A stretch of 54,627 bases of DNA, taken from the NCBI RefSeq assembly GCF_001194135.2, contig NC_068997.1, positions 27,295,452 to 27,350,078 of the forward strand, written 5' to 3'. Source of the DNA: Octopus bimaculoides (Eukaryota). Below, piece by piece: positions 1 to 53,630 of this stretch; the stretch's first letter is position 1, and the number at the start of each line of letters is the position of its first letter. The notes below the pieces were generated by a model. That model saw only the letters and a program-made list of their open reading frames with translations. It was not told where the DNA came from and did not search any database. The position numbers were made by a program, and so were the translations under genes.

Positions 1-372
1 TTTCCCATTGGCATAAGGTCCGAAATTCGGGGAGATGGGCTAGTCGATTACATTGTTCCATTGATTAACTGGTACTTTTCTTATTGATTCCGAAAGGATG
101 AAAGGCAAAGTCGACCTAGGCGGAATTTGAACTCAGAACGTAAAGCTGGACAAAATGCCGTTATGCATTTTGCCTTGCGTGCTAACGATATATATATAAA
201 GTTATAATGATATCATATTTTGGCACAAGGCCAGCAACTTCGTGAAGTTGGGAAAGTCAATTACATCGACCCCAGTGTTCAACTGGTACTTATTTTATCG
301 ACCACGAAAGGATGAAGGGCAAAGTCGACCTCGTCGGAATTTGAATGCAGGATTCTGTCAGCTCGCTGACTT
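1..372 (-). mobile_element. Two tandem copies of tRNA-derived SINE family A
   Basis: Both carry the GAAAGGATGAA.GGCAAAGTCGACCT.G.CGGAATTTGAA core shared with 46778-46918 and 51574-51790. Confidence 0.8.
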
Positions 373-612
373 ACATGTGAAGTAATAATAACCTCCAATA
401 TAAGAAAGTTACATTCATTTTAATGTTGGGACATTGTCAGAATATTTCGGACCCCAGAACGCAATTGATACTTATTCTATTATCTACAGTATATGAAAAA
501 AAAAAAATCAGTAGAATTTGAATTTCGGAACGTAATAGTGCAAGACAAAATACGGTAAGGTATTTTATTTCACCGGCACTTACCTTCAACCTCAGGAATG
601 ATGATTTTGATG

Positions 613-1591: not shown

Positions 1592-2240
1592 CTGATAAAA
1601 GTGGAAGTAAAATATTGATCAATAACAAATATTGATACGTTTAATTATTATTGTTGCTGTCATTGATTCTAATACAATAAACATATGACCAAAAATTTTT
1701 CAGCAAAAAACAAAAAACAAAAAACAAAACAAAACAGAGATGCCTTCCTCCAAATACAAACTACAGGAACTACCTAAACGCGTTGCAATCTCTTCTCGTC
1801 ATGATGACTAAAGCTATAGCAACGTTGAGACCCTTCCTGTATTGTCAGCAGCTATCTCAGGGTTACATAATTTCGTCCTTTAAACTTGTGCAACCAGTGA
1901 CACAAGCCCAGTAGTTATCAGGATAGAGGATTTGTATAGAGTTATCTTCTCTTAGGTGAGCAGTTAAAGAGCTGAAGCGTCTCATATGTCCTGAGTGCGT
2001 TGGGATGTCTGTGAATGACTTTCTTCCGGAGAGAATTTCGTGACATGCTAAGTAAACCATAACTGAAACATTCACTGATGCAACTATTCTGGGTCAGAGT
2101 AGTCCTGGGAAAAATTGGTGTTAAGAGAGGGTTTAATACACATCAAAACCCTGGAAGTTCAGAACCCGGGCTTCACTACCGTATCTAATTTAAAATTATA
2201 CTTACGACAGATGCTCAAATATATCAATGAAAAATGTTAC

Positions 2241-2364
2241 CTGATATTTGGGACTGGTGTTCTGGTATCCAGTCATTATTATTGTGGTCGATTCCACTGC
2301 AGTTTGTTTTCGGAATATCCCCTAGTTCGTAGTGAGCGACCAAACCTTTTTTTAACACTTGGTC
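2241..2364 (-). CDS. Gene 1 exon: C-terminal end of LamG-like domain
   Basis: tacttattggcag| acceptor; DQVLKKGLVAHYELGDIPKTNCSGIDHNNNDWIPEHQSQIS with a GLVAHY strand; donor G|gtaaca; phase 0-1. Confidence 0.78.
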
Positions 2365-2624
2365 CTGCCAATAAGTAAAGAATATAACGGTATTGTTAAT
2401 ATTAAGGACCATCAAGGACACAGGTGAAAGCTTGCAGTGACATACAAAATCTTCACACGATACTTCTATAAATCACTTTTACGTTTAATCATCTGTACAG
2501 TAGAAATATACCATAGATACACAATATAAGGGGATGTAGAACAAATGTGTGAAACAGACTGAAATGGAATGGAAATAATCTGAAAACATACATACACACA
2601 CAGACGTGCGTGCACCACCCCACC

Positions 2625-7986: not shown

Positions 7987-8211
7987 CTTCTTAGAATTAA
8001 CCTTTTTACCATTAGTAATTAAACTGATTTCAGTTCCAGTGTTGACAACTGCTACCGAATGCCATTGATGTAGGTGGTACTGAGTGTTAGAAGAGGTCAT
8101 TGGTATGGTACAAAGGTTCGACTTGCCTGGCGGACTGTAAAACGCTTGAAATCTTCCGTGTTGATAGGCAATACCGAAATGGAAGCAGTTATATATTCCA
8201 CCAGCTATTAA
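7987..8211 (-). CDS. Gene 1 exon: LamG-like domain core
   Basis: atatttcag| acceptor; 75 open codons LIAGGIYNCFHFGIAYQHGRFQAFYSPPGKSNLCTIPMTSSNTQYHLHQWHSVAVVNTGTEISLITNGKKVNSKK with the QWH.VAVV...L..NG motif; donor AAG|gtatgt; phase 0-0. Confidence 0.9.
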
Positions 8212-8727
8212 CTGAAATATTTAAAAAATAACAAAAATAACAACAACAATCATCATCATCATCATCATCATCATTTAATATCTATTTTCCATGCTGGCAT
8301 GGGTTGAGAACTTTGATAAAAGTCGGCAAGGCCAAAACCCGCACCAAACACCTTTGTTGTTTTCGGCATGGATTCTACAGCTGCATGCCCTTCCTAACAC
8401 CATCCACTTCACAGAGTGTACTGGGTGGTTTGTACGTAACACTAGCATTAACGCTTCTTACGTAAGACGAACACAAATGCTTGAACGAAATACGGAACTA
8501 AATATGTCTGTGTTGTGGGGAGCAGCAGGTAAAAAGAAAACAAACACGCACACACACGCGCTCACACACACGCACACACACATACACAAGCAAGCATAAC
8601 ATGCGTGCAAAACAAGATGGAGAAACAAGTGTCGAGTACCGAAGGCAGAGTAAAATACAGTGTTTTATTAAAGGTGAAGACCTTCAGTTTATGAACTTTT
8701 TCAGCTTCAATAAAATATTGTATTCAA

Positions 8728-8761
<34 letters not shown>

Positions 8762-8886
8762 ACTTACATATGTATAATATAATTTTATATTATATTATAG
8801 AACAATAACAGATACAAGAGCAACGAAAACCACTACCGCCACAACAGCAACAACAACAGCAACAGCAATAATAGCTTTGATCTTAC

Positions 8887-9021
8887 CCGGTTTGTCTGGT
8901 CCATCAAAGTTGGTTTCACCCAAGCTGCTATGGTATATTTCGGTCCTGGACTCCACTGGCCTAAATCTATGTAGGTATCGTTGCCATCAAAAGAGCCACC
9001 ACAAGAATATGGCGGTCCGAT
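8887..9021 (-). CDS. Gene 1 exon: start of LamG-like (concanavalin A-like) domain
   Basis: ttctattcctag| acceptor; IGPPYSCGGSFDGNDTYIDLGQWSPGPKYTIAAWVKPTLMDQTNR with SFDG..YIDLG and TI.AWVKP motifs; donor CGG|gtaaga; phase 0-0. Confidence 0.9.
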
Positions 9022-10084
9022 CTAGGAATAGAATTAAAATATATATAAAAAAAGATACATGAATGTTAAGTATGGCGAGATCTTCGGGACCTTCGTCAGT
9101 TAAAAACAAAAAAAGAGGTTAAAGTTCTTTCCCAAGATCTATGGACTCATAGACCCACTTTCCCGGTTTCTGTGGCGTATACATTCCCCACCTGGATGGG
9201 ACGCCAATCCATCGTAGGAATACTCATTTTCGTCAGCTGAGTGAACTGGAACAATATGAAATGAAGTGTTTTATTTAAGAACACAACGCATCACCCGGTC
9301 ACAGAATCAAAATCACAATCTTACGATCATAAGTTCAGCACTCTAACCACAAAGTCACACGCCCCTACTACCTTCATCAATTACGACAATGAAGATTCAC
9401 TCTCTCAATCAAGTGAATTAACGTGAAAGTGGCTAAATATTCCATAGAGACGTGCAACAAACAAGAAATCAACCTTTTTGAATTATAGATAAATCCATCT
9501 GACGGGCTTCTGTACAGTTTCCGTCTACCTAATTTCACTCACAAAGTATGGATCGACTCGAGGCTATAAATAATGACATTTTTCTTAGACACCCTAGATC
9601 TCGTGGTTGTGAAGCGAACTTCTTAATCATTCGGCCATACTCTGTCTGTAACATGAAATAAATCGCCTACTATCGCTCACACGTCTCATGTCTTTATCTA
9701 TATAATGCAGCTGATGACCAATGGCGCCATTGGTTACAATTTTCCAGTGGTCCGCAGTATTTGTGACGAGAAGGACTTCAAGGGAGTATTTGTAACTTGG
9801 TTCCGAACACATATTATGGAACATCGAACATAAAAATGTTTGTGCTTGCTCCCATCACCTCTTGACAACCGGTGTTGGTTTTTCACATCACCGTCAATTA
9901 GCGGGTTGGTAAGGGAGGTAAATGTAAATACAAGAAAGTACTGGGATCGATTTGGTTGTCATCAACGTAGTACCTCTCCATGGTCACAGTTCATTTACTG
10001 AAACAGATGTAAGGTAAAAAATAAATAACAATTAAAAAAAACAGTAACACTTTCTCGAGTGGGAGCAATGTATGAGTGACTCAC

Positions 10085-10209
10085 CTTGTTATTAGTGATA
10101 CATCTAGAAAACGTTTGATTTTTAAAGGTGAACGGAAGTTGGCACACATCTCTGGCGTTGTCACCTCCTGTAGCCTTAACCTGTACTAGTTCAACTGAGC
10201 GGCAAATAC
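10085..10209 (-). CDS. Gene 1 exon: EGF Cys3 then N-terminal half of a fibronectin type II domain
   Basis: ctatcacttctag| acceptor; (G)ICRSVELVQVKATGGDNARDVCQLPFTFKNQTFSRCITNNK, like FN2 TGG.....C..PF.F....F..C; donor AAG|gtgagt; phase 1-0. Confidence 0.88.
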
Positions 10210-10225
10210 CTAGAAGTGATAGATA

Positions 10226-12748: not shown

Positions 12749-12901
12749 CGGCATTGTTGCATGCAGCTTTCTTATGTGCTTTCTCCCAGTAGCTGCAGTA
12801 GTCGTATTCTTCACAGAATGCACCTGTATAACCCGGACGACAAATACAGGTATTCGATTTGATGTCACAGGTACCTCCGTTCTTGCAGGCACAAAAATAT
12901 T
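12749..12901 (-). CDS. Gene 1 exon: EGF-like domain 2 and start of a third EGF-like repeat (5' boundary uncertain)
   Basis: (E)YFCACKNGGTCDIKSNTCICRPGYTGAFCEEYDYCSYWEKAHKKAACNNA; donor G|gtaagt (phase 1); the only nearby acceptor is ctccag| at 12902-12903. Confidence 0.85.
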
Positions 12902-13385
12902 CTGGAGTTTTTGTGACGTTTGTAGTGGTGGTGGTGGTGGCGGTAGTGATGGTGGTTTTGGTAGTTTTGGTGGTGTTGGTAGTGGTGGCGGTGGTAGTAG
13001 TGGAAGTGGTGGTGATGTCGGTGTTAGTGGTGATGGTGGGAATGGCAGTTGTGGTGGAATAAATTGTCGTGTTGGTGGTGATAGTAGGGGTAGTGTGGTT
13101 AAAAGGTATTATAGTTGGAGATGGTTGTGGACATGGTGTTAGTGGTTATGGCAGTAAAATAGGTTGTGTCATTGTTGTTGTCGGTGGTGGTGGTGGTAGA
13201 ATTAATTATGGTAGTGGTGAGGGGTAAGACGGCGTGGTATTGGTGAAAAAGAAGAGAAATAAATGAATTTTTAAAACATGCCACAGAAAAGAACAAAATT
13301 TTCACGAAAATATTCGAAAGAAAAGACAAAACGCCTTTAATTAAGTAAACGGAATTAAATACAAGTATTTAATATATATATATCC

Positions 13386-13705: not shown

Positions 13706-14310
13706 AATTGGATAAAAGCCAAGATAGACAAAAACTAAGTAGATTCCCAATGTAGACTATGCAAATCAAAAGAAGAAAGCGTTACTCATATGTAAATGAA
13801 TGTAGCATGCTGGCACAGAATGAATGCAAGACATGACAACCTAGGGAGAGTAATCCCCTGGGAGTTATGTAGAAAGCTAGGATTTGATCCTACTGATAAA
13901 TGGTACGAACATGACCATAGTAAAGTACTAGAAAGTAAGAAACATAAGATGTTGTGGAACTTTAGCATTCAGAATAATAGAGTAATAGAAAGTAGAAGGC
14001 CTGATTTAGTAGTAGTAGTAGATAAAGAGAATAGAAAGTGCCAGATAATTGACTTTACAGTCCCAGAAGATGAAAAAATCAATATGAGAGGTACAGAAAA
14101 AATAGCAAAGGGCCAGGACCTAGCCATTGAATTATAGAGACTATGGAAAGTGTGGGTAAAACCTATCTTAGTTGTTATAGGTGCCTTGGGAACTATCTAA
14201 AGATTTGAACAGATGGATAGAAGAAATAGGCATAAAACACAGTTTAGTACAGCTCCAAACAGTTATTAGGGACAGCTAGGATACTTAGGAGGGTTCTTGG
14301 CATCTAATGT
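13706..14310 (+). mobile_element. Dong/R4-type retrotransposon zinc knuckle and RLE endonuclease fragment
   Basis: CRLCKSKEES.TH motif then ARHDNLGRVIPWELCRK..KWYEH..RRPDLVVVVDKENRKCQIIDFTVP..EKI..QDLAIEL (PD-D-K RLE motif). Confidence 0.88.
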
Positions 14311-14319
14311 TACTTGTTG

Positions 14320-15345
14320 GCCCCTGCAACAGACTTATATTCCATTACAATTGAGCCGACCATCCCCACTTTGGAGTCGTCCGACACCATGACGGTAACG
14401 TCGTCTGCGTACACCGACACTGCTCCCCAGAGTCCAATTTCGAAAAGGAGGCCTTGTAACTGTTCCAATTTCCGCAGCAGTGGCTCGAGAGCCAACATAT
14501 GCAGAGGAGGTGACAGCGGCCAGCTCTGACTGAGGGACCGAATGTGCGATACGACACAGTTTTGATAGATGACCATTTACTCTGACCACTGAGCAGGTAC
14601 CACAGCGCATTGCAACAATTCAGCCTCTGAAAACGAGTCCGACCCTATCGAAACCTTTTGACTGGTCTAAATTGATCCGGGCCCCACCGGAGCCAGCTTT
14701 AGCCCTAGCCATCTCTACGATGTATCGCATAAAGTGGAAGTTGTCGAGGATAGACCTGCTTGGGATTGTGCATCCCAGACCAGACTACTAACGACAAGTG
14801 ACAGCCTTTTCGCTAACACCTTGGCCAAAATCTTAAACTCTGTGTTTAGTAGAGTTATGGGCCGAAAAGTTCCATACCTATACCTGACCAGTTTTGCTTA
14901 TGTATTTTCTTGACCTCCAATACTGTCACTTCGTTTTCTTCTCGACCTTCTAAGACGGCCGCCGCTAACCAGGTAATGGATATTTCTGGCGGCACATTCA
15001 ACACCTTGATCTTGGCAAGGCGTTGGTCGCGGTAGCTGGGGGATTAACATTTTCATTCCTCAAAGTGGTCGAGGAATGACATCTGGCTTCTTCTTCATTC
15101 CCAAATCTCACCTCAGTAATTCTAAATTTCTTTCCTCGCGCCCGAGGCATTTTTGTATTTCGCTCTCAGGAACATTTTCCATTCGGCGTGACTTAACTCC
15201 GATGCAGCGGTATGTGACCATTCATCTTAAGATATTCTTTATCACGTCGGATGGAGGGTTTAGAGCTAGCCTTCTTCCATTCCTTTTTACAATTTCCCTG
15301 GCCATTTTTAGATCGTCTTCATCTATGCGGAAATCTGACAAATAA
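14320..15345 (-). mobile_element. L1/Tx1-clade LINE reverse-transcriptase fragment
   Basis: PLSP...LALEPLLRKL..SVYADDVTVMVSD; upstream DQSKGFDRV and PITLLNTEFKILAKVL motifs; frameshifted. Confidence 0.85.
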
Positions 15346-15354
15346 TAATAACAG

Positions 15355-15570
15355 CCCTTTCTACTATAGGCACAAGGCCTGAAATTTGGTGGGAGGGGAC
15401 TTGTAGATTACATCGACCCCAGTGTTTCATTGGTACTTAATTTATCGACTCCGAAAAAATGAAAGGTAAAGTTGACCTCGGCAGAATTTGAACTCAGAAC
15501 GTAAAGACGGACGAAATGCTGCTAAGCATTTTACCCGGCGTGCTAACGATTTTTCCAGCTCGTCGCCTTA
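15355..15570 (-). mobile_element. SINE family A, full length
   Basis: Reverse complement of the AAGGCGGCGAGCTGGCAGAA..GTTAGCACGCC head with a B-box-like GAGTTCAAATTC; ends at (TAA)n. Confidence 0.85.
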
Positions 15571-15774: not shown

Positions 15775-15896
15775 CTTTCCCCTATTTGTATAGCATAAAC
15801 CACTTTGGAGTTTCGCTCCATAACAGTCATTCTTTTGACATGCGCAAGATTCCGGTTGGTAGTCGGTAGGGCACTTCTGATTGGTAGTAGTTTGTA
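15775..15896 (-). CDS. Gene 1 exon 7: Cys-rich resistin-like module
   Basis: ttaactcttcaccag| acceptor; (V)QTTTNQKCPTDYQPESCACQKNDCYGAKLQSGLCYTNRGK; donor AAG|gtatgc; phase 1-0; open in the frame required by exon 6. Confidence 0.82.
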
Positions 15897-16608: not shown

Positions 16609-16712
16609 CTGTTCTCGTTTGACATCGTGATCCTGAAAATCCAGTGGGACATTTGCAAAAGAATCCGTCGCTTGTCGTTGCAACGCATGTTCCGAAAGGA
16701 GCACAGATATTT
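16609..16712 (-). CDS. Gene 1 exon 6: EGF-like domain 1
   Basis: ttttttag| acceptor; (Q)NICAPFGTCVATTSDGFFCKCPTGFSGSRCQTRT completes a 6-Cys EGF with exon 5; donor G|gttagt; phase 2-1. Confidence 0.9.
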
Positions 16713-18174: not shown

Positions 18175-18298
18175 TGTTTGCATGGGTGAGTGGGATTTAG
18201 TTGCAGAAACAAGAGATCCTTTTCTTGTCCGTCAGTCATGACGGGGTAGCATTTCGCTGGGTATCCACCACACCTGCCCACTCGGTAGTGAGATTGTC
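18175..18298 (-). CDS. Gene 1 exon 5: end of GON domain and first Cys of EGF1
   Basis: tttcctttccag| acceptor; (G)QSHYRVGRCGGYPAKCYPVMTDGQEKDLLFLQLNPTHPCK, like GON end G.CGGY..KC; donor CA|gtaact; phase 1-2; joins exon 4 and exon 6 in frame. Confidence 0.88.
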
Positions 18299-18344: not shown

Positions 18345-18346
18345 AT

Positions 18347-18444
<98 letters not shown>

Positions 18445-18683
18445 ATGCACACACACACGCATTTTACAAACACATGTACACACATAGATACACAATTACA
18501 AACACAAACAGAAACTCAAGCACACACACACAAAGTCACATGCATATACACATAAACATATACACACACGAACAAATATATACGCACAAACACAAACACA
18601 TACACACATACAAAACACATACATTCCGCCTTGCACAAGCCCTTCCTCTCACACACATACACACCTCATAAACACACGCACAT

Positions 18684-18759
<76 letters not shown>

Positions 18760-18870
18760 GCGCACACACAAACTCATCCATACACAAACACAAATACATA
18801 CACAAACACCTTCCATCCAAACACTCTACCTCCAACATAGAACACTTTCACACACACATACGCACACACC
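18345..18870. repeat. Long (CA)n tracts
   Basis: Two near-perfect CA runs and degenerate CA-rich filler. Confidence 0.95.
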
Positions 18871-20452: not shown

Positions 20453-20582
20453 CTGCAGTGTAAACAGAGAGAGCTAAGGAACCACCACATTTTCGATAGC
20501 GTTGACCACTACAGCGCATGGTACAGCCTCTGGACACACCCAGTTTGTTGTAGCTATTTCCACAGTAACAGTATCTTCCAGA
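20453..20582 (-). CDS. Orphan exon: C-terminal half of a WSC domain, inside GON intron 4
   Basis: cttcctttgcag| acceptor; SGRYCYCGNSYNKLGVSRGCTMRCSGQRYRKCGGSLALSVYTA, a typical WSC C.CG...C...C.G.....CGG...VY pattern; donor G|gtatgt; phase 0-1; no stops. Membership of the gene 1 mRNA is not established. Confidence 0.8.
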
Positions 20583-20898: not shown

Positions 20899-21557
20899 NN
20901 NNNNNNNNNNNNNNNNNNNNNNNNNNNNNNNNNNNNNNNNNNNNNNNNNNNNNNNNNNNNNNNNNNNNNNNNNNNNNNNNNNNNNNNNNNNNNNNNNNNN
21001 NNNNNNNNNNNNNNNNNNNNNNNNNNNNNNNNNNNNNNNNNNNNNNNNNNNNNNNNNNNNNNNNNNNNNNNNNNNNNNNNNNNNNNNNNNNNNNNNNNNN
21101 NNNNNNNNNNNNNNNNNNNNNNNNNNNNNNNNNNNNNNNNNNNNNNNNNNNNNNNNNNNNNNNNNNNNNNNNNNNNNNNNNNNNNNNNNNNNNNNNNNNN
21201 NNNNNNNNNNNNNNNNNNNNNNNNNNNNNNNNNNNNNNNNNNNNNNNNNNNNNNNNNNNNNNNNNNNNNNNNNNNNNNNNNNNNNNNNNNNNNNNNNNNN
21301 NNNNNNNNNNNNNNNNNNNNNNNNNNNNNNNNNNNNNNNNNNNNNNNNNNNNNNNNNNNNNNNNNNNNNNNNNNNNNNNNNNNNNNNNNNNNNNNNNNNN
21401 NNNNNNNNNNNNNNNNNNNNNNNNNNNNNNNNNNNNNNNNNNNNNNNNNNNNNNNNNNNNNNNNNNNNNNNNNNNNNNNNNNNNNNNNNNNNNNNNNNNN
21501 NNNNNNNNNNNNNNNNNNNNNNNNNNNNNNNNNNNNNNNNNNNNNNNNNNNNNNNNN

Positions 21558-21663
21558 GCTCGCCGCCTTGGAGGAAGATTCTGCCAGCTCGCCGCCTTGG
21601 AGGAAGATTCTGCCAGCTCGCCGCCTTGGAGGAAGATTCTGCCAGCTCACCGCCTTGGAGGAA
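21558..21663. repeat. 29-bp minisatellite, 3.6 visible copies running into a gap
   Basis: Unit GCTCGCCGCCTTGGAGGAAGATTCTGCCA. Confidence 0.95.
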
Positions 21664-22132
21664 ATAATCAAAAGAGTAAACAAAGATTTCCCCCATCCAA
21701 AACAGTTTTTCTAACATAGATTACTTGTATATGGTAGCTTCCCCACCTTCACTGATAATTGCCTTATTCCTGTGCTGCCTCGTTGTCAATAACGTTTCTG
21801 ATTTCCCGTCCATGACCGCACACATGACTATCTTCCCTGCGGGCAATCTGGGCATGACTTTAAACTATATCTTGTAGTGGGGCTTTGGTTCAGGAGTTTC
21901 AGACATTTGAGGTGTGTGGAAATACCTCTTAGCCTCTTTTGTTCCCAGGTTAACTCTGACTCGAAGTAGTAGCACCTGTCACGGTTTCAGTTACGGATTT
22001 ACAAGCAGATGTGATGACAGTCCCTCTGAGTGCGGGAGAAGCAGAAATATTTCTGTGTACATACGTATACGCACACAGATATACATGTATACATACATTA
22101 ATACGACAGATATGCATACATACATGCATACG

Positions 22133-22164
<32 letters not shown>

Positions 22165-23192
22165 CATATATGTGTGTGTGTGTGTGTATGTGTGTATATA
22201 TATGTATGTATATATATATATANNNNNNNNNNNNNNNNNNNNNNNNNNNNNNNNNNNNNNNNNNNNNNNNNNNNNNNNNNNNNNNNNNNNNNNNNNNNNN
22301 NNNNNNNNNNNNNNNNNNNNNNNNNNNNNNNNNNNNNNNNNNNNNNNNNNNNNNNNNNNNNNNNNNNNNNNNNNNNNNNNNNNNNNNNNNNNNNNNNNNN
22401 NNNNNNNNNNNNNNNNNNNNNNNNNNNNNNNNNNNNNNNNNNNNNNNNNNNNNNNNNNNNNNNNNNNNNNNNNNNNNNNNNNNNNNNNNNNNNNNNNNNN
22501 NNNNNNNNNNNNNNNNNNNNNNNNNNNNNNNNNNNNNNNNNNNNNNNNNNNNNNNNNNNNNNNNNNNNNNNNNNNNNNNNNNNNNNNNNNNNNNNNNNNN
22601 NNNNNNNNNNNNNNNNNNNNNNNNNNNNNNNNNNNNNNNNNNNNNNNNNNNNNNNNNNNNNNNNNNNNNNNNNNNNNNNNNNNNNNNNNNNNNNNNNNNN
22701 NNNNNNNNNNNNNNNNNNNNNNNNNNNNNNNNNNNNNNNNNNNNNNNNNNNNNNNNNNNNNNNNNNNNNNNNNNNNNNNNNNNNNNNNNNNNNNNNNNNN
22801 NNNNNNNNNNNNNNNNNNNNNNNNNNNNNNNNNNNNNNNNNNNNNNNNNNNNNNNNNNNNNNNNNNNNNNNNNNNNNNNNNNNNNNNNNNNNNNNNNNNN
22901 NNNNNNNNNNNNNNNNNNNNNNNNNNNNNNNNNNNNNNNNNNNNNNNNNNNNNNNNNNNNNNNNNNNNNNNNNNNNNNNNNNNNNNNNNNNNNNNNNNNN
23001 NNNNNNNNNNNNNNNNNNNNNNNNNNNNNNNNNNNNNNNNNNNNNNNNNNNNNNNNNNNNNNNNNNNNNNNNNNNNNNNNNNNNNNNNNNNNNNNNNNNN
23101 NNNNNNNNNNNNNNNNNNNNNNNNNNNNNNNNNNNNNNNNNNNNNNNNNNNNNNNNNNNNNNNNNNNNNNNNNNNNNNNNNNNNNNNNNNNN

Positions 23193-23455: not shown

Positions 23456-23628
23456 CGTACTTGCTTAATGTTACCGTCCCATTACGTCCGCCATCTTGGA
23501 AGTGTCCTTCCCATTTCCATCTCGCTTTCTGGTGTATTATAAAAGGTGTTCCACTCAGATCAATACTGAATACGCCCTGAGGTCGACATCGCGGTAAGGG
23601 ACTGAACATGCCACCAGCTGTACCGTAA
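23456..23628 (-). CDS. Gene 1 exon 4: GON domain
   Basis: ttttattag| acceptor; (S)YGTAGGMFSPLPRCRPQGVFSIDLSGTPFIIHQKARWKWEGHFQDGGRNGTVTLSKY, like GON TAG....C.PQG.FSI.L.GT; donor G|gtaagt; phase 2-1. Confidence 0.92.
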
Positions 23629-26757: not shown

Positions 26758-26911
26758 CTGATATTGTTAGGTCCATATGAGCGAGTAAAAGTGAAGTCAT
26801 TTCTTATTATGCTGTTAGCAGCAATGTCGAAAGCGACTTTGACGAATTCAGTTCGTCCACGTTTTGAGTAAAGCTTGCGTGGAGTATTTTGGTAACAGTC
26901 ATACGGGAGAC
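26758..26911 (-). CDS. Gene 1 exon 3: GON domain
   Basis: ctatttcag| acceptor; (S)LPYDCYQNTPRKLYSKRGRTEFVKVAFDIAANSIIRNDFTFTRSYGPNNI, like GON F.KV..D.....I...D..F.R..G; donor AG|gtatcg; phase 1-2. Confidence 0.9.
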
Positions 26912-28587: not shown

Positions 28588-28671
28588 TAACGTAATTATA
28601 CACAGACGCATAATTCTTAGATCTTCCCGCCGGCAAAGTCAGGTATTCTTTCGGATTCTTAGATTTAATAC
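28588..28671 (-). CDS. Gene 1 exon 2: GON domain
   Basis: tttttcag|GT acceptor; (G)IKSKNPKEYLTLPAGRSKNYASVYNYV with the GON PKEY.TL..G...N...VY motif; donor A|gtaagt; 84 nt, phase 1-1. Confidence 0.92.
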
Positions 28672-33509: not shown

Positions 33510-33935
33510 GCAAGTTCGAAGTGGGGGTAAGTCAATTACATTGACCCTAGTACTCAACTGGTACATATTTTATCGACTCCGAGACGATGAAAGGCGAAGT
33601 CGATGCGTTGGAATTTGAACTCAGTTCGTAAAGACGGACAAAATGCTGCTAAGCATTTTGCCTGGCGTGCCAACAATTCTACCTAACCGCCCTATAACCT
33701 GTCAATATTACAATTAGGAGAAAGGCGGCAAGCTTGCAGTATCATTAGTACACTGGGAAAAATGCTTACCGGCATTTCATCCGTCTTTACAAACGGAGTT
33801 CAAATCCGACCGATGTCGACTTTGTTTTTCGTCCTTTCGAGATCGAAAAAATAAATACCAGTCGAACACTGGGACTCTATGTAATCGACTTAACCACTCC
33901 ACCAAAACTGTTTGTTTTAAGCCAAAATTTGAAAC
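33510..33935. mobile_element. Head-to-head inverted pair of SINE family A
   Basis: Minus copy 33510-33694 and plus copy 33721-33935, about 27 nt apart. Confidence 0.8.
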
Positions 33936-34425
33936 CAATATTACAGTTCGAAAGATATTTCATATTATGGAAGTGCTCATTTGTTTTGTCGAGAGAGGAA
34001 AAATGAAGTTAAAGAAAATAAAACTAAATTCCGTAGAAAAAAACATTTTTTAGCTATTTTTGTTCTGTGTTAGACAATATGAAATGACAGTCCATTCACG
34101 TTGAATTATGATTCCGCAGGAAAAAGCGACACTTATCTTTATGAGAGTATATCTTTGTTTCGTCGAGAGAAGAAAAATACAATAAGATGAAAAAAAAAAA
34201 AAAAAAGTAACAATTAAAATTCCATTTGCAAAAAGTTAAATTTTTTTCCCCCTCAGATGAAACGAAAGGACAGTCCTATCACGTCACTGTTTTTTTTCTT
34301 CTCATACTACTCAAACATATCCAAACTTAAGATTTTCATTCAATAACAAATTTATCATAAGTATCGTATGGTATCAGAATGCAAGAATGAAAGAGGAGAT
34401 GTAATTTTTCTTTTCTTTTACTTAC

Positions 34426-34627
34426 CATGGCAGTAAAGATTAACCGCATGCCCAGACGAAGTCATTATCTGGTATATACCATCTACAGCACTCGTTCCCA
34501 AACTAATCATAGCTTCCTCGCAAGAATGGTAGACCTCTCCGTAAACCGTAAAAGAAGTAAAAGCTAAAATAAGGTAAAGCCGGATCCATGTTTGGCCGAA
34601 GCTGTTATATTTGCGAAACACGTTCAT
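34426..34627 (-). CDS. Gene 1 exon 1: signal peptide and start of GON domain
   Basis: caaacATG start; MNVFRKYNSFGQTWIRLYLILAFTSFTVYG (hydrophobic core) then EVYHSCEEAMISLGTSAVDGIYQIMTSSGHAVNLYCH, matching the GON start SC.E......DG.Y.I......YC; donor G|gtaagt, phase 1. Confidence 0.9.
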
Positions 34628-44138: not shown

Positions 44139-44205
44139 ATGTACTGGATGTTGGTCACTCTACTGACAAACAACATTGTACAAAATGGCGCCGACAAAAT
44201 CTTCG
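44139..44205 (+). CDS. Gene 2 probable first coding exon (signal peptide)
   Basis: ATG at 44139 gives MYWMLVTLLTNNIVQNGADKIF; perfect donor G|gtaagt; phase 1 matches the C-type lectin exon at 50516. Confidence 0.55.
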
Positions 44206-44567
44206 GTAAGTCACAATGGACTACCGTTACTTCTTCAATTACTTAGATGTCAAACACACACACACACACTCATATACGTATATGCATAGGTATATGTGTG
44301 TCCAAATATATGTATATTTACATATATGTATGTATGTATATATATATATATATATATATATNNNNNNNNNNNNNNNNNNNNNNNNNNNNNNNNNNNNNNN
44401 NNNNNNNNNNNNNNNNNNNNNNNNNNNNNNNNNNNNNNNNNNNNNNNNNNNNNNNNNNNNNNNNNNNNNNNNNNNNNNNNNTCATATATGTACACACACA
44501 CACTCACTCACATATATATACATATATTTGTATATCATCATCATCGTCATCATCATCGTCGTCGTCG

Positions 44568-44600
<33 letters not shown>

Positions 44601-44757
44601 ACATTATCATCAATATCATACGTATTAAACCTGTACAGGGTTAGACGTTGACAGTGACTTCGAAGTTTAATAAATATGCACTCTACTACAGTAGAGTATT
44701 GAATAATCCTTCAGCTTAACGTTAAATTGTTTTTACATAACTTGACATAGAAACAAA

Positions 44758-44807
<50 letters not shown>

Positions 44808-44918
44808 TGTATGTGTGTCTGTGTGCGTATGTGTGTTTGACTTTATCGTTGTCTCTTCTCTCTTCTATCATCCATTTTTATATTATACATATATATGTAT
44901 AGGCATATAAATCTAATA

Positions 44919-44967
<49 letters not shown>

Positions 44968-45176
44968 GTCTATCCACATGTGTGTATATGTGTGCATATA
45001 AATCTCTCTCCCCTCCTCCCCTTCCTCCTCTCTCTTTCTCTCTCAATCATATTTTAAGTACATATATATTGATGTATGTATATATGCATGTATGGTTGTG
45101 TTTTGGAATTATGTTCGGATTCCCTTGACAATATAGAAATGGACATCATTGAATAAGCGGATTGAATATGTATTGA

Positions 45177-45247
<71 letters not shown>

Positions 45248-46147
45248 ATCATTATAAAAAATTATATTACCTGATCTGAATGTGTTTATGTAAACTATTT
45301 TTCAACTTATCGCAGAGGATACACAAAACCTCAAACTTTTTCTTGTCATTGTCAAAGACTATCACTTGATTTTGAATGCATTTATATAAACTAATTTTTG
45401 ACACCACAGAAGATACACAATGCCTCATACATTACATTTGAAGATCTTTTTTAATTAGTGAAACCGGTTAAGTTAAATACTTTTACAAGACTCATGCATT
45501 TCCCCTTATATACACACACATATATATGTATATATACGTATAAATATATATATTTATATATGTATATACACATATGTGTATATATGTATTTATAGATGTA
45601 TGCGAGTGCATAAATATATGTGTCTGTAGGTGTGTGTCTACATATGTCTGCAACGGGTGTATATATTTACTTCTTTACATGTGCGTTTTTGTTTATATGT
45701 TTACACGTGCGTATATGTTTGCATGTTTCCATACAAGAATAAATAAATAAAAAGAAAGACATTTACGACCTTCTGCTGTCATGCTTAGACGCTGATATGG
45801 CCTTAAATCTAAAGCATCCGATATGGCTGTGTAGTGAACAAGCTTGCTTCGCACCCACGTATCGTGGCTTCTGGCTTCAGGTTTAGATCCTCGGTGAAAC
45901 TCATGTAGGGCATAATTCTCTTATTTATTTTTCTGATTTATTTTTGTGTGATAATCGTTTGCTTTTGTATTAGTTTCTTAACGAGGCAACCATGTTTTGT
46001 TATATTTCTGTAGAAAAAACTTCAGTTGAGCAAATCAGTCGTAATAAATTAATATTGTTCTACCATGTGGTATACAACATGTGAACATATGTGCGTTAAT
46101 GTATCAATACTCGAGTGTATATATGTTGTGATCATGTACATGTTTTA

Positions 46148-46440
46148 CAAGGCGGCAAGTTGACAGAGTCGTTAGCAGGCCGGACAAAGTCCTTAGTGGC
46201 ATTTCGTCCGTCTTCGTGCTCAGAGCTCAAATTTCGCCGAGGTCGGATTTCGATGTCGACATAAGACAAATCGATTATATCGACGTCCAATACTACACAG
46301 ATACTTTGTTTTATCGACTTCGAACGATGAAGGACAAAGGTGACCCAAGCGGGATTTGAACTCCAAACATAAAGGGTCGGAAGAAATACCACTAAGCATT
46401 TTGACCGACGTACTAAAGGTTCTGCCAGTTTGCCGTCCTC
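46148..46440. mobile_element. Tail-to-tail inverted pair of SINE family A
   Basis: Plus head 46148-46260 directly followed by a minus copy ending GTTCTGCCAGTTTGCCGTCCT. Confidence 0.8.
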
Positions 46441-46777
46441 ATAGAGTCTATGCGACTATACTCTTTAATGGTTACACCTTTTTATTCTAATATGACAGGG
46501 TGTGGTTTATGGGAGATTTGGCAGATATTATTGTAACTACTCGTGATATAACACGAACTATCGACTCCTTTTTCATTCAATGTATTGCGACGCACCTGAT
46601 ATCCAATCCACAGCCGTCAGAAACATCAAGTGTTGAAGCGTACCACTAGCCAATATACGCACACATATTGCTTTCGTTAAAGATTGTGTGTGTTCATTTT
46701 GCTTTCTTTGCTTGTTGAACTACTGGAGTGGCACAGATCAGAGGTCGTTGCTGCGATAATATTCCTTATCGCATAAC

Positions 46778-46918
46778 AAGGCGGCGAGCTGGCAGAAACG
46801 TTAGCACGCCGGGCGAAATGCTTAGCGGTATTTCGTCTGTCTTTACGTTCTGAGTTCAAATTCCGCCAAGGTCGACTTTGCCTTTCATCCTTTCGGGATC
46901 GATAAATTAAGTACCAAA
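46778..46918 (+). mobile_element. SINE family A, low-divergence copy
   Basis: AAGGCGGCGAGCTGGCAGAAACGTTAGCACGCCGGGCG..CTGAGTTCAAATTCCGCC; A-box and B-box-like tRNA head. Confidence 0.9.
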
Positions 46919-47305
46919 AATGAAGTATTACTATACATTCTATATTCCATATTCTATATCCCACATTAATTTTATAAGAATATAAATAAAACATAAAAAA
47001 CAGAGTTGGAATTCTTTTGAATAATATATTCCTCTATACACTATCATACAAACCTCTTTTTTTTATTTCATATATATNNNNNNNNNNNNNNNNNNNNNNN
47101 NNNNNNNNNNNNNNNNNNNNNNNNNNNNNNNNNNNNNNNNNNNNNNNNNNNNNNNNNNNNNNNNNNNNNNNNNNNNNNNNNNNNNNNNNNNNNNNNNNNN
47201 NNNNNNNNNNNNNNNNNNNNNNNNNNNNNNNNNNNNNNNNNNNNNNNNNNNNNNNNNNNNNNNNNNNNNNNNNNNNNNNNNNNNNNNNNNNNNNNNNNNN
47301 NNNNN

Positions 47306-47337
<32 letters not shown>

Positions 47338-47569
47338 GAAAATAGATCCGTTTTTCATCCCTAGCTTCAATTCGACACCCAGAACGGGCATCTCGAGGAT
47401 TTGCCACCTGTCGTTTACAAATGTTCAGATACTGTTGAACCTGGTCATTGAGTACGCGGGGCTTCTCGACGGCGTCCGTTCACAAGGTCAAGCTTATGGA
47501 GTTGTCGATTGATGGTGCTTTGTGAAGGACCAAGTTCTGCCGACAAAATACGAGTGCTTGTGCTTAGCA

Positions 47570-47830
47570 GTCGTTCAACCATTTCAGGCAAAGCCTAATC
47601 TTTCACAAGAGATAGTCTCCCTGACCTTAGTTTGTCTTTAAGGCTGGTGTCAGCTTCATCGAAAAGTTTGAACGAGTTCTGTACCCAATTGTGGTTGACA
47701 GGTCCTGGACATTCCACATCATTAGTTTGTTTTGCCGCTTCCCTTTCAACCAGTCCTATTTTACCATAGGTAGAGTTAAATTCCTCTAATTGCAATATTT
47801 TCCTCACTCATAAAGAATACACAATTACTG
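47570..47830 (-). mobile_element. Mariner 5' (HTH) fragment
   Basis: EAAKQTNDV..PGPV..WVQNSFKLFDEADTSLKDKLRSGR. Confidence 0.75.
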
Positions 47831-49137
47831 TTTATATATGTCATATATGAAAATAAAGAATAAGTAACAATTGGATAAGCAACAGTTACTAATTATATAA
47901 CATAGAGATACTAGTTGCCAAAAATCACAAGTGAAAATCTGAAAAACTTTTCATTGAACCTCGTATATATGTGATACATCCCCCACACACCGAAACTGGC
48001 GGCTGTCTCGGATTTAGGTACTATATACATATCTGCTTTGTGGTATATAGTAGGGATTCCTTCAACCTGTTGTAACCACAGACGTTGCTATATTATTCTA
48101 ATTAGTATTTTATTATTTAATAATCACGTACACCGAAAAATACCTCAGCTACATAAATATGTATTATCCACACAAACGCCAGAACTGACCCCCCCCCCTA
48201 CACGCGCGCACCGCCCACACCCCCACAAACAAGCACATACAGTGACAAACCTCACATACACACATATGTATGTCTATATTTGTACATATGTGTACACACA
48301 TACGTACATACATTCTTGCACGCGTACATATACACACACATACACAGCTATATACATATATATCGTTGCGTATGTGTGTGACTATATGTGTATATGTATG
48401 TGTGTTCAATAGCCGTTATGCTTCTTTCATAACATAACTGTTTCAGTTTTCACAAACAATCCCAGATCGATTCAGTTTTTCGCCCAAAACAAAAACCTAA
48501 ACATCATATAAGAAATCAAAACGAACAGATACAGAAACGAAGCCAGCAAACAATTAAATGATTCAGCGAAACATGCTTGAACTTTGATATCTCACCTGAT
48601 TTCAATCGATCCCAAAGTACAGACGATAGGATACATTTGAACAGGATATAATAGATTGAGGAAAATAATTATATCTTATTGATAATTTTTTAATCTTTTA
48701 GCTTTGATAATCCTTACATAACCGGGGGAAATGTATTAGTTCGAACTGAATGTGTCGCTTGACCCATCTGTTTACAATGAGTGACTTGTGATGGCTGAAA
48801 CACTAAGTACACTTTTGATAAGTGATAACCACACTTCATCTTATTTGTTGTTGCTGTTGTTGTTATTGTTTTTGATGTTGCAGGGTAGCCTTAGTTAGCT
48901 CCCGAATGAGGGTCACTTTTGCTTACTCTTGATCGAGGCTCCTCCAAGGTCTTTCTTCATTGAAGTTAGTCTTAGATCAGTGTTGATCGAGGTTCTTTCT
49001 AGACCAGTCTTGGTTTGGTGGTGATAGTGGAGGGACTGCATTGAACTGCTTCTCTGTTTGATCTGTCGTGGGCGTAGAATCATGTGCAATAGAACTGGCA
49101 GTGAAGGGCAAAATGCTCACTTGTTACACTTAAGGGA

Positions 49138-49177
<40 letters not shown>

Positions 49178-50515
49178 GGGGAAGTAAGCAACGTGAAACC
49201 CTGGTACGGATGTAACAACAGGTATAAAATATACCCCAACACCTTGTAATACATTTCCTTCCCGTGAGTGCGTATTAGATACGTTTACACGAAAACATAA
49301 GAACACCGAACCATTTTTTCTTCCTGTGCTCATACTCAAATACACACATACACACGTATACACATACACGCAAATGCACGCATATAACGGTTTTATTAAC
49401 TCCCACATTCAAAATCAATGAGAAAGAACTGCAGGTTAATAATGGAATAAATTATGTTAATGCTATTTATTACTGGCGTGTAATTTCACAAGGTAACATT
49501 AAAGAGAGCAATCTTAAATACTACCTGTTTTCTTTATGGTAATTATTTGACGTAATCTGACCAATCTTTCATACAAACTCTACTTGGATTTCATGATAGC
49601 TACCTCATTTGAGTTCTTATAGACGTCCAGTTTAATTTCCCATACAATTTATGACAGGCGCATAAGTTTTTTCTTTACTTTAAATATTCAGTAAGAAACT
49701 GTTGTAATATTGAAACGTACTTCGATAAAAACATATAGTACAGGTTGAAAAGGGATTCCAGATAGTTCTAGAACTAAGGTGATTTCTTCCGTGATCCTTG
49801 GAGCTGCTCCTGAAAGATTTTGAAATTATTACGCTCACCAAAAGCATCATCTCCATTCCAGAAGTGTGTCTCCTAGATGCAGAAAGAAAGCGATGGAGTT
49901 GGAGGTAGAGAAGTAGAAAAGTTCAGTTGTTACGTATATGGTTTGATTTACGTGCAACGTACAAAAGGTAGACGGCCAGTAATAAAACAGTCGATAGTCT
50001 ACTTTTGTGACTACTACAACTCTTACAGACGCCAATACCTGAATTGCTTCCGCTATCTTTATCACAATCTATTTTGAGTATCTGGATGGACAGAGAATGC
50101 ATTGAAACGGAAGGTGATCGTCAAGGTTGAGAATTGCCTGGAACAATCGCAGGTGGTGACTTCTTACCTGCAGGTTACCATTATATGACCTTCGTGTTTA
50201 GTCAGTTACACTTCATTTTATGTTCATTCTGACGAGTACTTCTTCGAATATTACCCAACATTGCCTTTCTCCTTTCAGGGTCAATAAAATAAGCACCAGC
50301 TGAGCGCTGAGGTCGATGTAATCGACTAGACCCCTTCCCCGAAATTGCTGGCCTTGGCCCCAAATTTGAAATTATCATCATTATTATTGTTGTTGCTGCT
50401 GTTGTTATTATTATTATTGCAATTATTATTGTTATCATTATCTAATACTGTTTCATGTACCACAAAAACAAACAATAAACTCTGTATCATTGTATATTGA
50501 TTCATCTTGTTTCAG

Positions 50516-50610
50516 ATTGCCCAGATAGCTGGGTGTCCCATGGCAGATCTTGTTACCAGTTCAACTTTTTCCAGAAAATGTTTTTTGAGGATGCTGAAAT
50601 GACATGCCAG
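50516..50610 (+). CDS. Gene 2 exon: C-type lectin domain, part 1
   Basis: tcttgtttcag| acceptor; (D)CPDSWVSHGRSCYQFNFFQKMFFEDAEMTCQ, classic CP..W......CY.F......A...C; donor CAG|gtaaat; phase 1-0. Confidence 0.92.
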
Positions 50611-51463: not shown

Positions 51464-51549
51464 GCGGACGGAGCACAACTGGTCAGTATCAATGGGAGAG
51501 AAGAACATCAGTTCGTGATGAATTGGTTAAGATCAGGCGACCCCTTAAG
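51464..51549 (+). CDS. Gene 2 exon: C-type lectin domain, part 2
   Basis: ttgtcgttgtag| acceptor; ADGAQLVSINGREEHQFVMNWLRSGDPL, like GA.LVSI...EE..F; donor AG|gtgagt; phase 0-2. Confidence 0.92.
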
Positions 51550-51573
51550 GTGAGTATTATTTAAATGCAGATT

Positions 51574-53006: not shown

Positions 53007-53098
<92 letters not shown>

Positions 53099-53585: not shown

Positions 53586-53630
<45 letters not shown>

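What the first reader, a model, noticed from the sequence alone, without database searches (positions are those of the whole stretch)
20453..20582. Intact WSC exon in the intron that splits the GON domain: candidate domain-within-domain insertion
Seen: a stop-free exon with canonical splice sites and six Cys, encoding the second half of a WSC domain, lies on the gene 1 strand between GON exon 4 (ends phase 1) and GON exon 5 (starts phase 1). It is phase 0-1, so it cannot be included alone. Known: WSC is a carbohydrate-binding module; from memory, animal WSC domains often split into a phase 1-0 and a phase 0-1 exon. Inference: a missing phase 1-0 exon sits in gap 20899-21557 or 22223-23191, giving a symmetric cassette that splices a WSC domain into GON at LSKY^GQSH, the position of a loop before the GxCGGY strand. 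That would be a skippable lectin-like insert within GON, which I do not know to be described. Alternatives are a misjoin at the (CA)n tracts at 18345-18870, a nested gene, or a relic exon.
Basis: partly seen in the sequence, partly recalled or inferred. Interest (0 to 1): 0.8.

Follow-up and report, generated by a model that had tools for sequence, protein, structure and literature searches.

The report
Half of a WSC domain nested in GON
The exon is the real second half of a sugar-binding-type WSC module that sits inside the GON domain of an old, unnamed animal gene; its first half is hidden in an assembly gap, so octopus annotation cuts the gene in two.

Summary
Window 20582-20453 (minus strand) is a stop-free, AG/GT-bounded, phase 0-to-1 exon encoding the C-terminal half of a WSC domain. 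It lies between GON exon 4 (ends phase 1 at 23456) and GON exon 5 (starts phase 1 at 18298).

The closest homologues are from Lottia, Crassostrea, Ostrea, Batillaria, Dreissena and the tunicate Ciona. All carry WSC sequence inserted in GON at the residue equivalent to LSKY^GQSH (truncated in the Batillaria and Dreissena models). In Ostrea, Lottia and Ciona the WSC is encoded by two exons with the predicted phases, 1-to-0 then 0-to-1.

A sponge homologue (Oscarella) has an empty 51-nt phase-1 intron at the same codon. This fits exon shuffling of a 1-1 module into an existing intron, before protostomes and deuterostomes split.

No first-half exon exists anywhere in the assembled window, so it must lie in gap 20899-21557 or 22223-23192. 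The chromosome-level assembly keeps both gaps.

Actual skipping of the cassette has no support. I found no paper describing the nested architecture, though the proteins are in public databases as "uncharacterized" or "ADAMTS9/20-like".

The parts
34426..34627 (-). GON-family gene, coding exon 1: ATG at 34627, signal-like N-terminus and start of the GON domain; ends in phase 1
   Evidence: Exact match to P0001 residues 1-67. Donor cat g|gtaagt read directly.
28588..28671 (-). GON exon 2 (phase 1 to phase 1)
   Evidence: Exact match to P0001. Splice sites read.
26758..26911 (-). GON exon 3 (phase 1 to phase 2)
   Evidence: Exact match to P0001. tblastn with Lottia, Crassostrea and Batillaria proteins.
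23456..23628 (-). GON exon 4, ends ...TVTLSKY + G in phase 1; the last exon before the insertion point
   Evidence: Pfam GON match. Aligns to the same exon of the homologues.
22223..23192 (.). Assembly gap (970 N): one of two possible locations of the unassembled first-half WSC exon. Predicted about 131-134 nt, phase 1 to 0, encoding roughly Y.GC[FY].D...LP...C...C...G..[YF]AG.[QE]
   Evidence: N run. Same gap in GCA_001194135.2. Exon predicted from the Ostrea, Lottia and Ciona structures.
21558..22222 (.). 665-bp contig between the two gaps. Contains no WSC coding sequence; starts with a 29-bp tandem repeat
   Evidence: Six-frame reading. HMM search. Tandem Repeats Finder.
20899..21557 (.). 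Assembly gap (659 N): the other possible location of the first-half WSC exon
20453..20582 (-). The finding: second-half WSC exon (WSC-b), 130 nt, phase 0 to 1, five Cys, C.CG signature of the inserted WSC type
18175..18298 (-). GON exon 5 (GON C-terminal part, GQSHYRVGRCGGYPAKCYP...HPCK), phase 1 to phase 2. It lies on the same contig as WSC-b
   Evidence: Contig continuity 20898-13706.
16609..16712 (-). EGF-like exon (NICAPFGTCVATTSDGFFCKCPTGFSGSRCQTRT)
   Evidence: Colinear with the EGF that follows GON in the homologues.
15775..15896 (-). Cys-rich exon (VQTTTNQKCPTDYQPESCACQKNDCYGAKLQSGLCYTNRGK)
   Evidence: tblastn with Lottia P0004 residues 340-382.
12756..12902 (-). Second EGF-like region (approximate; these are HSP limits)
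   Evidence: tblastn with Lottia, Crassostrea and Batillaria proteins.
10070..10210 (-). Fibronectin type II-like region (approximate)
   Evidence: tblastn. Pfam fn2 E=5.5e-5.
8008..9021 (-). Two Laminin_G_3 (ConA-like) exons, 9021-8887 and 8214-8008 (approximate), with the intron between them
   Evidence: tblastn, 67% identity to Lottia. Pfam Laminin_G_3.
2239..2421 (-). Conserved region downstream of LamG (GLVAHYELG...IDH..DW). The gene runs on past the start of the window
   Evidence: tblastn.

Best explanation
The 130-nt exon is an ordinary, functional coding exon. It is the 3' half of a two-exon WSC module nested inside the GON domain of the octopus orthologue of an uncharacterized, ancient animal gene (Lottia LOTGIDRAFT_169789; Crassostrea virginica LOC111138107, LOC111138113 and LOC111138099).

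Expected mRNA order: GON exons 1-4, then WSC-a (not assembled, hidden in gap 20899-21557 or 22223-23192), then WSC-b (20582-20453), then GON exon 5, EGF, a Cys-rich region, EGF, FN2, LamG and further domains.

In the protein, the WSC is a Kremen-type, presumably carbohydrate-binding, eight-Cys module. It bulges out of a short beta-hairpin loop between the last strand of the GON N-terminal part and the GRCGG strand, so GON still folds as one domain around it.

In evolution, a class 1-1 WSC module entered a pre-existing phase-1 intron by exon shuffling. This happened before molluscs and tunicates diverged.

Shown: the exon, its phases, its orthology, and the nested architecture and exon structure in other species. 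Inferred: that the missing octopus exon exists and where it lies, that splicing is constitutive, that the module binds sugar, and the shuffling scenario.

The two-way split of the gene in octopus annotation is an artefact of the missing exon. One model is 221 aa and runs into the intron after exon 4. The other is 467 aa and starts at Met22 inside WSC-b.
For: 1. Homologues. A phmmer search of octopus GON (without WSC) against 1.84 billion representative proteins has as top hits Lottia P0004, C. virginica P0005, Batillaria P0007, Ostrea P0011, Dreissena P0006 and Ciona P0008 (species). Each carries WSC sequence directly after the residues aligned to octopus ...TLSK. Where the model is complete, GON resumes with ..I.GRCGG[YF]PG.C.P. 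Octopus WSC-b plus exon 5 aligns colinearly with that segment.

2. Exon structure. The pattern is identical in Ostrea, Lottia and Ciona: the GON exon ends in phase 1, WSC-a is phase 1 to 0 and ends ...AG.Q, WSC-b is phase 0 to 1 and starts just before C.CG, and GON-C starts in phase 1. Octopus matches at all three boundaries that are assembled.

3. Exon identity. WSC-b has the C.CG signature of the four inserted WSCs examined, not the C.CD of the downstream WSC. It also scores higher against the inserted copy in each of the three species where both were compared. The downstream WSC is split at different positions.

4. Physical linkage. WSC-b and GON exon 5 lie on one gap-free contig (window 20898-13706), in the conserved order and orientation.

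5. Empty site. Oscarella P0157 lacks the WSC and has a 51-nt phase-1 intron in the homologous codon. Its AlphaFold model (pLDDT 87) puts that codon in a 5-residue loop between strands SVSF and IVSGRC.

6. Downstream gene. It is colinear with the mollusc proteins through EGF, FN2 and LamG.

7. Gene models. Two independent models already splice WSC-b in frame to exon 5: P0002, and the NCBI model that starts at window 20519 (plus the coordinate mapping).
Against: The first-half exon was never observed in octopus. It is absent from every assembled base of the window, and the gaps are not filled in GCA_001194135.2.

No cephalopod transcript or second cephalopod genome could be examined. The protein searches returned no other cephalopod sequence.

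The AlphaFold model of the oyster GON[WSC] is only moderately confident (mean pLDDT 70; residues 235-271 of the WSC below 50), so the geometry of the nested domain is not established.

Sugar binding is assumed from the WSC family name and from similarity to Kremen-1 WSC (E=4e-13). It was not tested.
Confidence: 0.85

Rival explanations
1. Alternatively spliced cassette. WSC-a and WSC-b are real exons, but they are included only in some transcripts or tissues. The protein would then exist with and without the lectin-like module on GON.
For: The two-exon unit is symmetric (phase 1 to 1). In Ostrea it is 131 + 139 = 270 nt. Skipping it therefore keeps the frame and gives a contiguous GON like the natural insert-free form in Oscarella.
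Against: None of the C. virginica RefSeq proteins and isoforms examined skips the WSC. X1 and X2 keep it, and X3 starts downstream of the whole GON. The module is retained in every mollusc homologue seen and in Ciona, which fits a constitutive part of the protein. No transcript data were available.
Confidence: 0.1
2. Relic exon. Octopus has lost WSC-a, WSC-b is a decaying remnant that is always skipped, and the octopus protein has a plain GON domain.
For: WSC-a is not in the assembled sequence. The skipped form would be in frame.
Against: WSC-b keeps an open frame, both canonical splice sites, the ancestral phases and all five conserved Cys. It still scores E=7.4e-11 against a profile built from distant molluscs and a tunicate. 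A neutral remnant would not be expected to keep all of this over that span. About 1.6 kb of unassembled sequence lies exactly where WSC-a should be.
Confidence: 0.04
3. Assembly artefact or nested gene. The 2-kb piece carrying the WSC exon was joined to the GON exon 5 piece through the (CA)n tract at 18348-18809. Alternatively it belongs to a separate gene lying in the intron, or it is the misplaced exon of the gene's own downstream WSC.
For: A 460-bp imperfect (CA)n array separates WSC-b from exon 5. The draft has 17 gaps.
Against: The order WSC-b then GON-C exon, on the same strand and with the same phases, is what Ostrea, Lottia and Ciona have. A chance misjoin would not reproduce it. The exon has the inserted-type signature C.CG and the inserted-type boundaries, not those of the downstream WSC. 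No other WSC-related coding sequence or separate gene start is present nearby.
Confidence: 0.01

Closest known systems
Orthologous uncharacterized mollusc and tunicate proteins: Lottia gigantea LOTGIDRAFT_169789 (XP_009066331.1); Crassostrea virginica LOC111138107, LOC111138113 and LOC111138099; Ostrea edulis LOC130047286 plus the adjacent gene model; the Ciona intestinalis locus on AP043567.1
   Same: Same N-terminal architecture: signal peptide, GON with WSC nested at the same residue, the CGG[YF]PG.C motif, EGF, Cys-rich region, EGF, FN2, Laminin_G_3. Same exon boundaries and phases around the insert.
   Different: The octopus copy is incomplete in the assembly. WSC-a is missing, and the 3' part of the gene lies outside the window. 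Identity is only about 37-47% in GON. None of these proteins has a described function.
GON domain of ADAMTS9, ADAMTS20 and C. elegans GON-1 (Pfam PF08685)
   Same: Octopus exons 1-5 match the GON profile. NCBI names the fragment 'ADAMTS9-like'.
   Different: There is no metalloprotease, disintegrin or thrombospondin part. GON is N-terminal here rather than C-terminal. It is interrupted by a WSC. The conserved CGGYCG.C motif has become CGG[YF]PG.C. An amphioxus canonical GON gene has a phase-0 intron a few residues downstream instead of the phase-1 intron. The ADAMTS name is therefore a misnomer.
WSC domain of Kremen-1 (PDB 5FWS, 7BZT)
   Same: It is the best solved-structure sequence match to the inserted WSC of the oyster orthologue (E=4e-13). 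Both have the same eight-Cys pattern, three in the first half and five in the second.
   Different: Kremen's WSC lies between a kringle and a CUB domain as a separate bead. Here it is nested inside another domain. Ligand unknown.
Oscarella lobularis GON-LamG-WSC receptor tyrosine kinases (tandem genes on OX382162.1, including XP_065840049)
   Same: Same family-specific GON (CGGFPG.C), followed by an EGF-like motif. In neighbouring full-length models, Laminin_G_3 and a downstream WSC follow as well. A phase-1 intron lies at the homologous codon.
   Different: No WSC in that intron, which is only 51 nt. The C-terminus is a protein kinase rather than EGF repeats.
Nested (inserted) domains created by exon shuffling of class 1-1 modules (general concept; from my own knowledge, after Patthy and later surveys of domain insertions)
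   Same: A symmetric phase 1-1 extracellular module sits in a phase-1 intron. The host domain is continuous in relatives.
   Different: This particular pair, WSC inside GON, is not described in any paper I could find.

Membership tests
WSC domain (Pfam PF01822) | Match to the C-terminal half of the profile, with the C.C ... C...C ... CGG Cys pattern | tested here: met
   Pfam positions 47-82 of 82, E=1.7e-5. Family HMM E=7.4e-11. Five Cys, as in the orthologous exons.
WSC domain (Pfam PF01822) | Whole-domain score above Pfam's gathering cut-off (27.8 bits) | tested here: inconclusive
   25.4 bits. Only half the domain is assembled, so the cut-off cannot fairly be reached.
WSC domain (Pfam PF01822) | N-terminal half (Y.GC..D ... 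C...C ... AG.Q, three Cys) | not testable with these tools
   Absent from all assembled sequence. Expected inside N gaps that are also unfilled in GCA_001194135.2.
GON domain (Pfam PF08685) | Profile match above the gathering cut-off, continuous across the exon 4/5 junction | tested here: met
   39.8 bits against 22.6, profile 125-193, for exons 4+5 alone. P0001 carries PF08685.
GON[WSC]-EGF-FN2-LamG family (Lottia LOTGIDRAFT_169789 orthologues) | WSC inserted between the strand ending ...(I/L).(T/S).(S/K) and the ..I.GRCGG strand of GON | tested here: met
   Alignments A1-A3. Only the second half is seen in octopus.
GON[WSC]-EGF-FN2-LamG family (Lottia LOTGIDRAFT_169789 orthologues) | Intron phases 1 | 1-0 | 0-1 | 1 around the insert | tested here: met
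   Octopus. Ostrea. Lottia. Ciona. The WSC-a boundaries are unseen in octopus.
GON[WSC]-EGF-FN2-LamG family (Lottia LOTGIDRAFT_169789 orthologues) | CGG[YF]P.xC in place of the canonical CGGYCGxC | tested here: met
   Octopus has GRCGGYPAKC.
GON[WSC]-EGF-FN2-LamG family (Lottia LOTGIDRAFT_169789 orthologues) | Colinear downstream EGF, Cys-rich, EGF, FN2 and Laminin_G_3 regions | tested here: met
   tblastn of the Lottia, Crassostrea and Batillaria proteins against the window. Pfam.
ADAMTS9/20 metalloproteases (the name given by NCBI) | Reprolysin catalytic domain, disintegrin-like domain and thrombospondin repeats upstream of GON | tested here: not met
   The octopus ORF starts with Met and a signal-like peptide directly before GON. 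Full-length orthologues show no such domains.
Alternatively spliced cassette exon | Frame-preserving when skipped | tested here: met
   The flanking introns are both phase 1. The Ostrea cassette is 270 nt.
Alternatively spliced cassette exon | Transcripts or annotated isoforms both with and without the exon(s) | tested here: not met
   C. virginica isoforms X1-X3 do not skip the WSC. Octopus transcripts could not be tested with these tools.

The most novel reading that the evidence does not exclude
The WSC cassette is a regulated switch. Because it is a frame-preserving 1-1 unit in a hairpin loop of GON, tissue-specific skipping could produce receptor forms with and without a lectin-like module.

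More broadly, GON[WSC] may mark an undescribed, pre-bilaterian family of cell-surface receptors. The sponge members carry a tyrosine kinase, and the mollusc and tunicate members carry EGF repeats instead. No vertebrate member appeared among the 150 best hits.
Probability: 0.12. Interest if true: 0.6.

Novelty: new member of a known kind. Interest (0 to 1): 0.45.

Why it matters
For the octopus genome, two gene models are really one gene, broken by a missing exon of about 131 nt. They are an "ADAMTS9-like" model of 221 aa and a downstream model of 467 aa that begins inside the WSC exon. The ADAMTS name is wrong.

The same breakage at the same intron appears in the NCBI models of Ostrea, Dreissena and Ciona. 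The nested domain therefore seems to defeat automatic gene prediction repeatedly.

For protein evolution it is a clean case of one domain inserted into another. The exon phases are preserved in molluscs and a tunicate, and a sponge relative keeps the empty phase-1 intron at the same codon. Together these let the exon-shuffling step be reconstructed and dated to before the protostome-deuterostome split.

The family itself is unstudied. It comprises GON[WSC]-EGF-FN2-LamG-WSC-EGF repeats with a membrane anchor in molluscs, and GON-LamG-WSC-kinase in a sponge. It could be a carbohydrate-recognising receptor. GON has no solved structure that I could detect.

Tried and rejected
- Searching the 43-aa exon alone in the word-indexed protein database found nothing. 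That index evidently misses true matches, because P0002 contains the exon exactly. The profile search also missed P0004 and P0005. Absence there is therefore not evidence.
- I fetched the chromosome-level O. bimaculoides assembly hoping to fill the gaps. It is identical to the window, with the same N runs.
- I looked for WSC-a in the 316 bp upstream of the exon, in the 665-bp island contig and in the 263 bp below exon 4, in all six frames. I then searched the whole window with a family HMM. Nothing was found.
- The upstream ORF that the old model P0002 attaches to the exon (20772-20645, through a 63-nt 'intron') has no similarity to WSC. I reject it as a prediction artefact.
- Foldseek of both AlphaFold models against the PDB gave no significant match (best E=0.42 and 0.097). 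The GON fold could not be anchored to a solved structure.
- I tested whether the phase-1 intron is general to GON domains. In amphioxus P0003 it is not: the nearest intron is phase 0 and lies a few residues downstream.
- I looked for a skip isoform among the C. virginica RefSeq proteins and found none.
- P0106 might have been another cephalopod or mollusc locus, but it is only a 643-bp metagenome contig.

Full report
**What the window is.** It is a draft Octopus bimaculoides scaffold with 17 runs of N. It is base-for-base identical, gaps included, to part of chromosome CM046617.1 of GCA_001194135.2. A large gene runs along the minus strand from about 34.6 kb to beyond the window start.

**The observation.** On the minus strand, 20582-20453 reads ctttgcag|TCT GGA ... 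GCA G|gtatgt.
- It is 130 nt, open, and goes from phase 0 to phase 1.
- It encodes SGRYCYCGNSYNKLGVSRGCTMRCSGQRYRKCGGSLALSVYTA.
- Pfam places it on positions 47-82 of the 82-position WSC profile (E=1.7e-5).
- A profile built from the inserted WSC domains of the relatives found later scores it E=7.4e-11. The next best of 1,899 six-frame segments has E=1.4.
- It has five Cys, not six.

GON exon 4 ends TAC G|gtaagt at 23456, and GON exon 5 starts ccag|GA CAA at 18298. Joined, they give an unbroken GON match (profile 125-193).

**Existing gene models.**
- NCBI's "ADAMTS9-like" P0001 (221 aa) covers exons 1-4 and then reads into the intron.
- An older model, P0002, joins a spurious upstream ORF to the WSC exon, GON exon 5 and the EGF exons.
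- The next NCBI gene (467 aa, hEGF and Laminin_G_3) starts at locus position 24109, which maps to window 20519. That is Met22 inside the WSC exon.

Gene predictors therefore already splice the WSC exon in frame to exon 5. They cannot connect it to exon 4, which is what a missing phase 1-to-0 exon would cause.

**Relatives.** I searched octopus GON (exons 1-5, without WSC) against 1.84 billion representative proteins. After P0001, the best hits include:
- Lottia gigantea LOTGIDRAFT_169789
- Crassostrea virginica LOC111138107 (with paralogues LOC111138113 and LOC111138099)
- Batillaria attramentaria
- Ostrea edulis LOC130047286
- Dreissena polymorpha
- Ciona intestinalis (species)

In all of them the sequence aligned to octopus ...GTVTLSK is followed at once by WSC sequence. 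In Ostrea this reads Y.GCF.D...LP...C...C...AG.Q..C.CG...C...C...CGG...SVY.TG. GON then resumes with ..I.GRCGG[YF]PG.C.P...HPC and an EGF. Canonical GON domains of the ADAMTS type, and an Oscarella homologue, run straight through this point. Octopus WSC-b plus exon 5 aligns colinearly with the second half of the insert and the GON C-terminal part.

**Exon structure elsewhere.**
- Ostrea: ACG T|gtaagt ... cag|CT TAC GTC (phase 1); CTC CAG|gtaaag ... cag|AAT TCT (phase 0); ACA G|gtaaac ... cag|GT GTG (phase 1).
- Lottia has the same three boundaries and phases.
- In Ciona I found the WSC-b and GON-C exons that NCBI's 230-aa model omits. The phases are again the same, with introns of about 55-80 nt.

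The first-half exon is 131-134 nt in those species.

**Is the octopus exon really the inserted WSC?** The same proteins have a second WSC far downstream, so a misplaced exon had to be considered. Four observations argue against it.
- The four inserted copies examined read C.CG and the four downstream copies read C.CD. Octopus reads CYCG.
- Alignment scores favour the inserted copy in Lottia, Crassostrea and Ciona: 100 against 91, 72 against 56, and 77 against 52.
- The downstream WSC is not split before C.C in Lottia or Ciona.
- WSC-b and GON exon 5 share one gap-free contig, in the order seen in the other genomes.

**Where is the first half?** It is not in the 316 bp upstream of the exon, not in the 665-bp island contig, and not in the 263 bp below exon 4. 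It is nowhere else in the window. It must lie in one of the two gaps, which are bordered by microsatellites. I could not reach any other cephalopod genome or transcript with the tools at hand.

**Origin.** Oscarella lobularis (accession-to-species link from PMC12465263) has tandem genes of this family. Their GON carries the CGGFPG.C signature, and in neighbouring models it is followed by Laminin_G_3, WSC and a protein kinase. GON there has no insert. It does have a 51-nt intron, TCA A|gttagt...tgtag|AC TTG, in phase 1 in the homologous codon.

An amphioxus canonical GON gene has instead a phase-0 intron a few residues further on. The phase-1 intron is therefore a family trait rather than a general GON trait.

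The simplest history is insertion of a symmetric 1-1 WSC module into that intron before the mollusc-tunicate split. Precise loss in the sponge lineage is not excluded.

**Structure.**
- The insert-free Oscarella GON models well (mean pLDDT 87, pTM 0.84). The intron codon lies in a 5-residue loop (SNLRQ) between strands SVSF and IVSGRC.
- The oyster GON[WSC] model is weaker (mean pLDDT 70). The GON parts score about 80-90, and residues 235-271 of the WSC score below 50. It still shows GON strands on both sides of the insert.
- Neither model has a significant PDB neighbour.
- By sequence, the insert is closest to the Kremen-1 WSC (E=4e-13).

**Skipping.** The cassette preserves the frame, so skipping is possible in principle. 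None of the C. virginica RefSeq isoforms I read lacks it, and every mollusc homologue seen, and Ciona, retains it. I rate regulated skipping at about 10%.

**Literature.** No paper in the searchable library mentions "GON domain" together with WSC. All 25 papers that mention the GON domain concern ADAMTS proteins or list Pfam names.

**Verdict.** The exon is an ordinary coding exon of a conserved but unstudied gene. The domain-within-domain reading is right. The apparent oddity in octopus comes from an assembly gap. What is new is the recognition of the nested GON[WSC] architecture and its exon-shuffling signature, which is a fresh example of a known kind of event.

Noticed in passing
window 20519 and 23456; L002 6001-12118; L005 8001-9249: Automatic annotation breaks this gene at or next to the nested WSC in four genomes. 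Octopus: 221 aa plus 467 aa. Ostrea: 256 aa plus 1898 aa. Dreissena: a 276-aa model that reads into the intron after WSC-a. Ciona: 230, 300, 179 and 1415 aa. The N-terminal pieces are named 'ADAMTS9/20-like' although no protease part exists.
   Followed up: partly
L004 1-17746 (Oscarella lobularis OX382162.1): Three tandem paralogues start with the family's GON domain. The neighbouring full-length models carry GON, Laminin_G_3, WSC and a Tyr/Ser-Thr kinase domain, so the sponge version of this family looks like a receptor kinase.
   Followed up: partly
window 18240-18270 (GRCGGYPAKC) and alignments A1-A3: In this family, including the sponge, the conserved GON motif CGGYCGxC has lost its middle Cys (CGG[YF]PGxC; PAK in octopus). 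One disulphide of canonical GON is presumably absent or rewired.
   Followed up: no
P0028, P0042, P0053 (Branchiostoma): Amphioxus proteins have a complete GON followed about 30-190 residues later by a WSC. The two domains are in tandem, not nested, so they also co-occur outside the nested family.
   Followed up: no
models m3a979ef9bdfd and m17117863cebf: A confident AlphaFold model of a GON domain (pLDDT 87) has no significant Foldseek neighbour in the PDB (best E=0.097). No GON chain appears in the PDB sequence search either. GON seems to have no solved structure.
   Followed up: partly
window 14313-14576 (-): A reverse-transcriptase fragment with a YADD motif (Pfam RVT_1, weak, E=0.0017) lies inside an intron of the gene. 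A longer ORF on the opposite strand nearby (13796-14134) has no Pfam match.
   Followed up: partly
window 200-382 (+), 15445-15567 (-), 33780-33959 (-), 46680-47033 (-), 51632-51790 (-): A short interspersed repeat recurs at several places. Its translation reads ...[FY]R[PS]RK[DN]E.QSR.[RW]RNLN..., and it is seen on both strands in introns and flanks. It is probably a SINE-like element.
   Followed up: no
window 21558-21663: A 29-bp tandem repeat (3.7 copies, 98% match) lies at the edge of the island contig between the two gaps.
   Followed up: no
window about 44139-54627 (+): The neighbouring gene, on the opposite strand, encodes a 991-aa product with C-type lectin and many Ig/I-set domains according to the record's precomputed Pfam hits. 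A CPDSWVSHGRSCYQF-type exon is visible at 50479-50667.
   Followed up: no
L003 5339-5480 (Lottia): The JGI Lottia model uses an internal donor and drops the end of WSC-b. The genome continues in frame ...CGGGGKTDRCGGSYRISVYSTS, so the published protein lacks the last WSC Cys and strand.
   Followed up: partly
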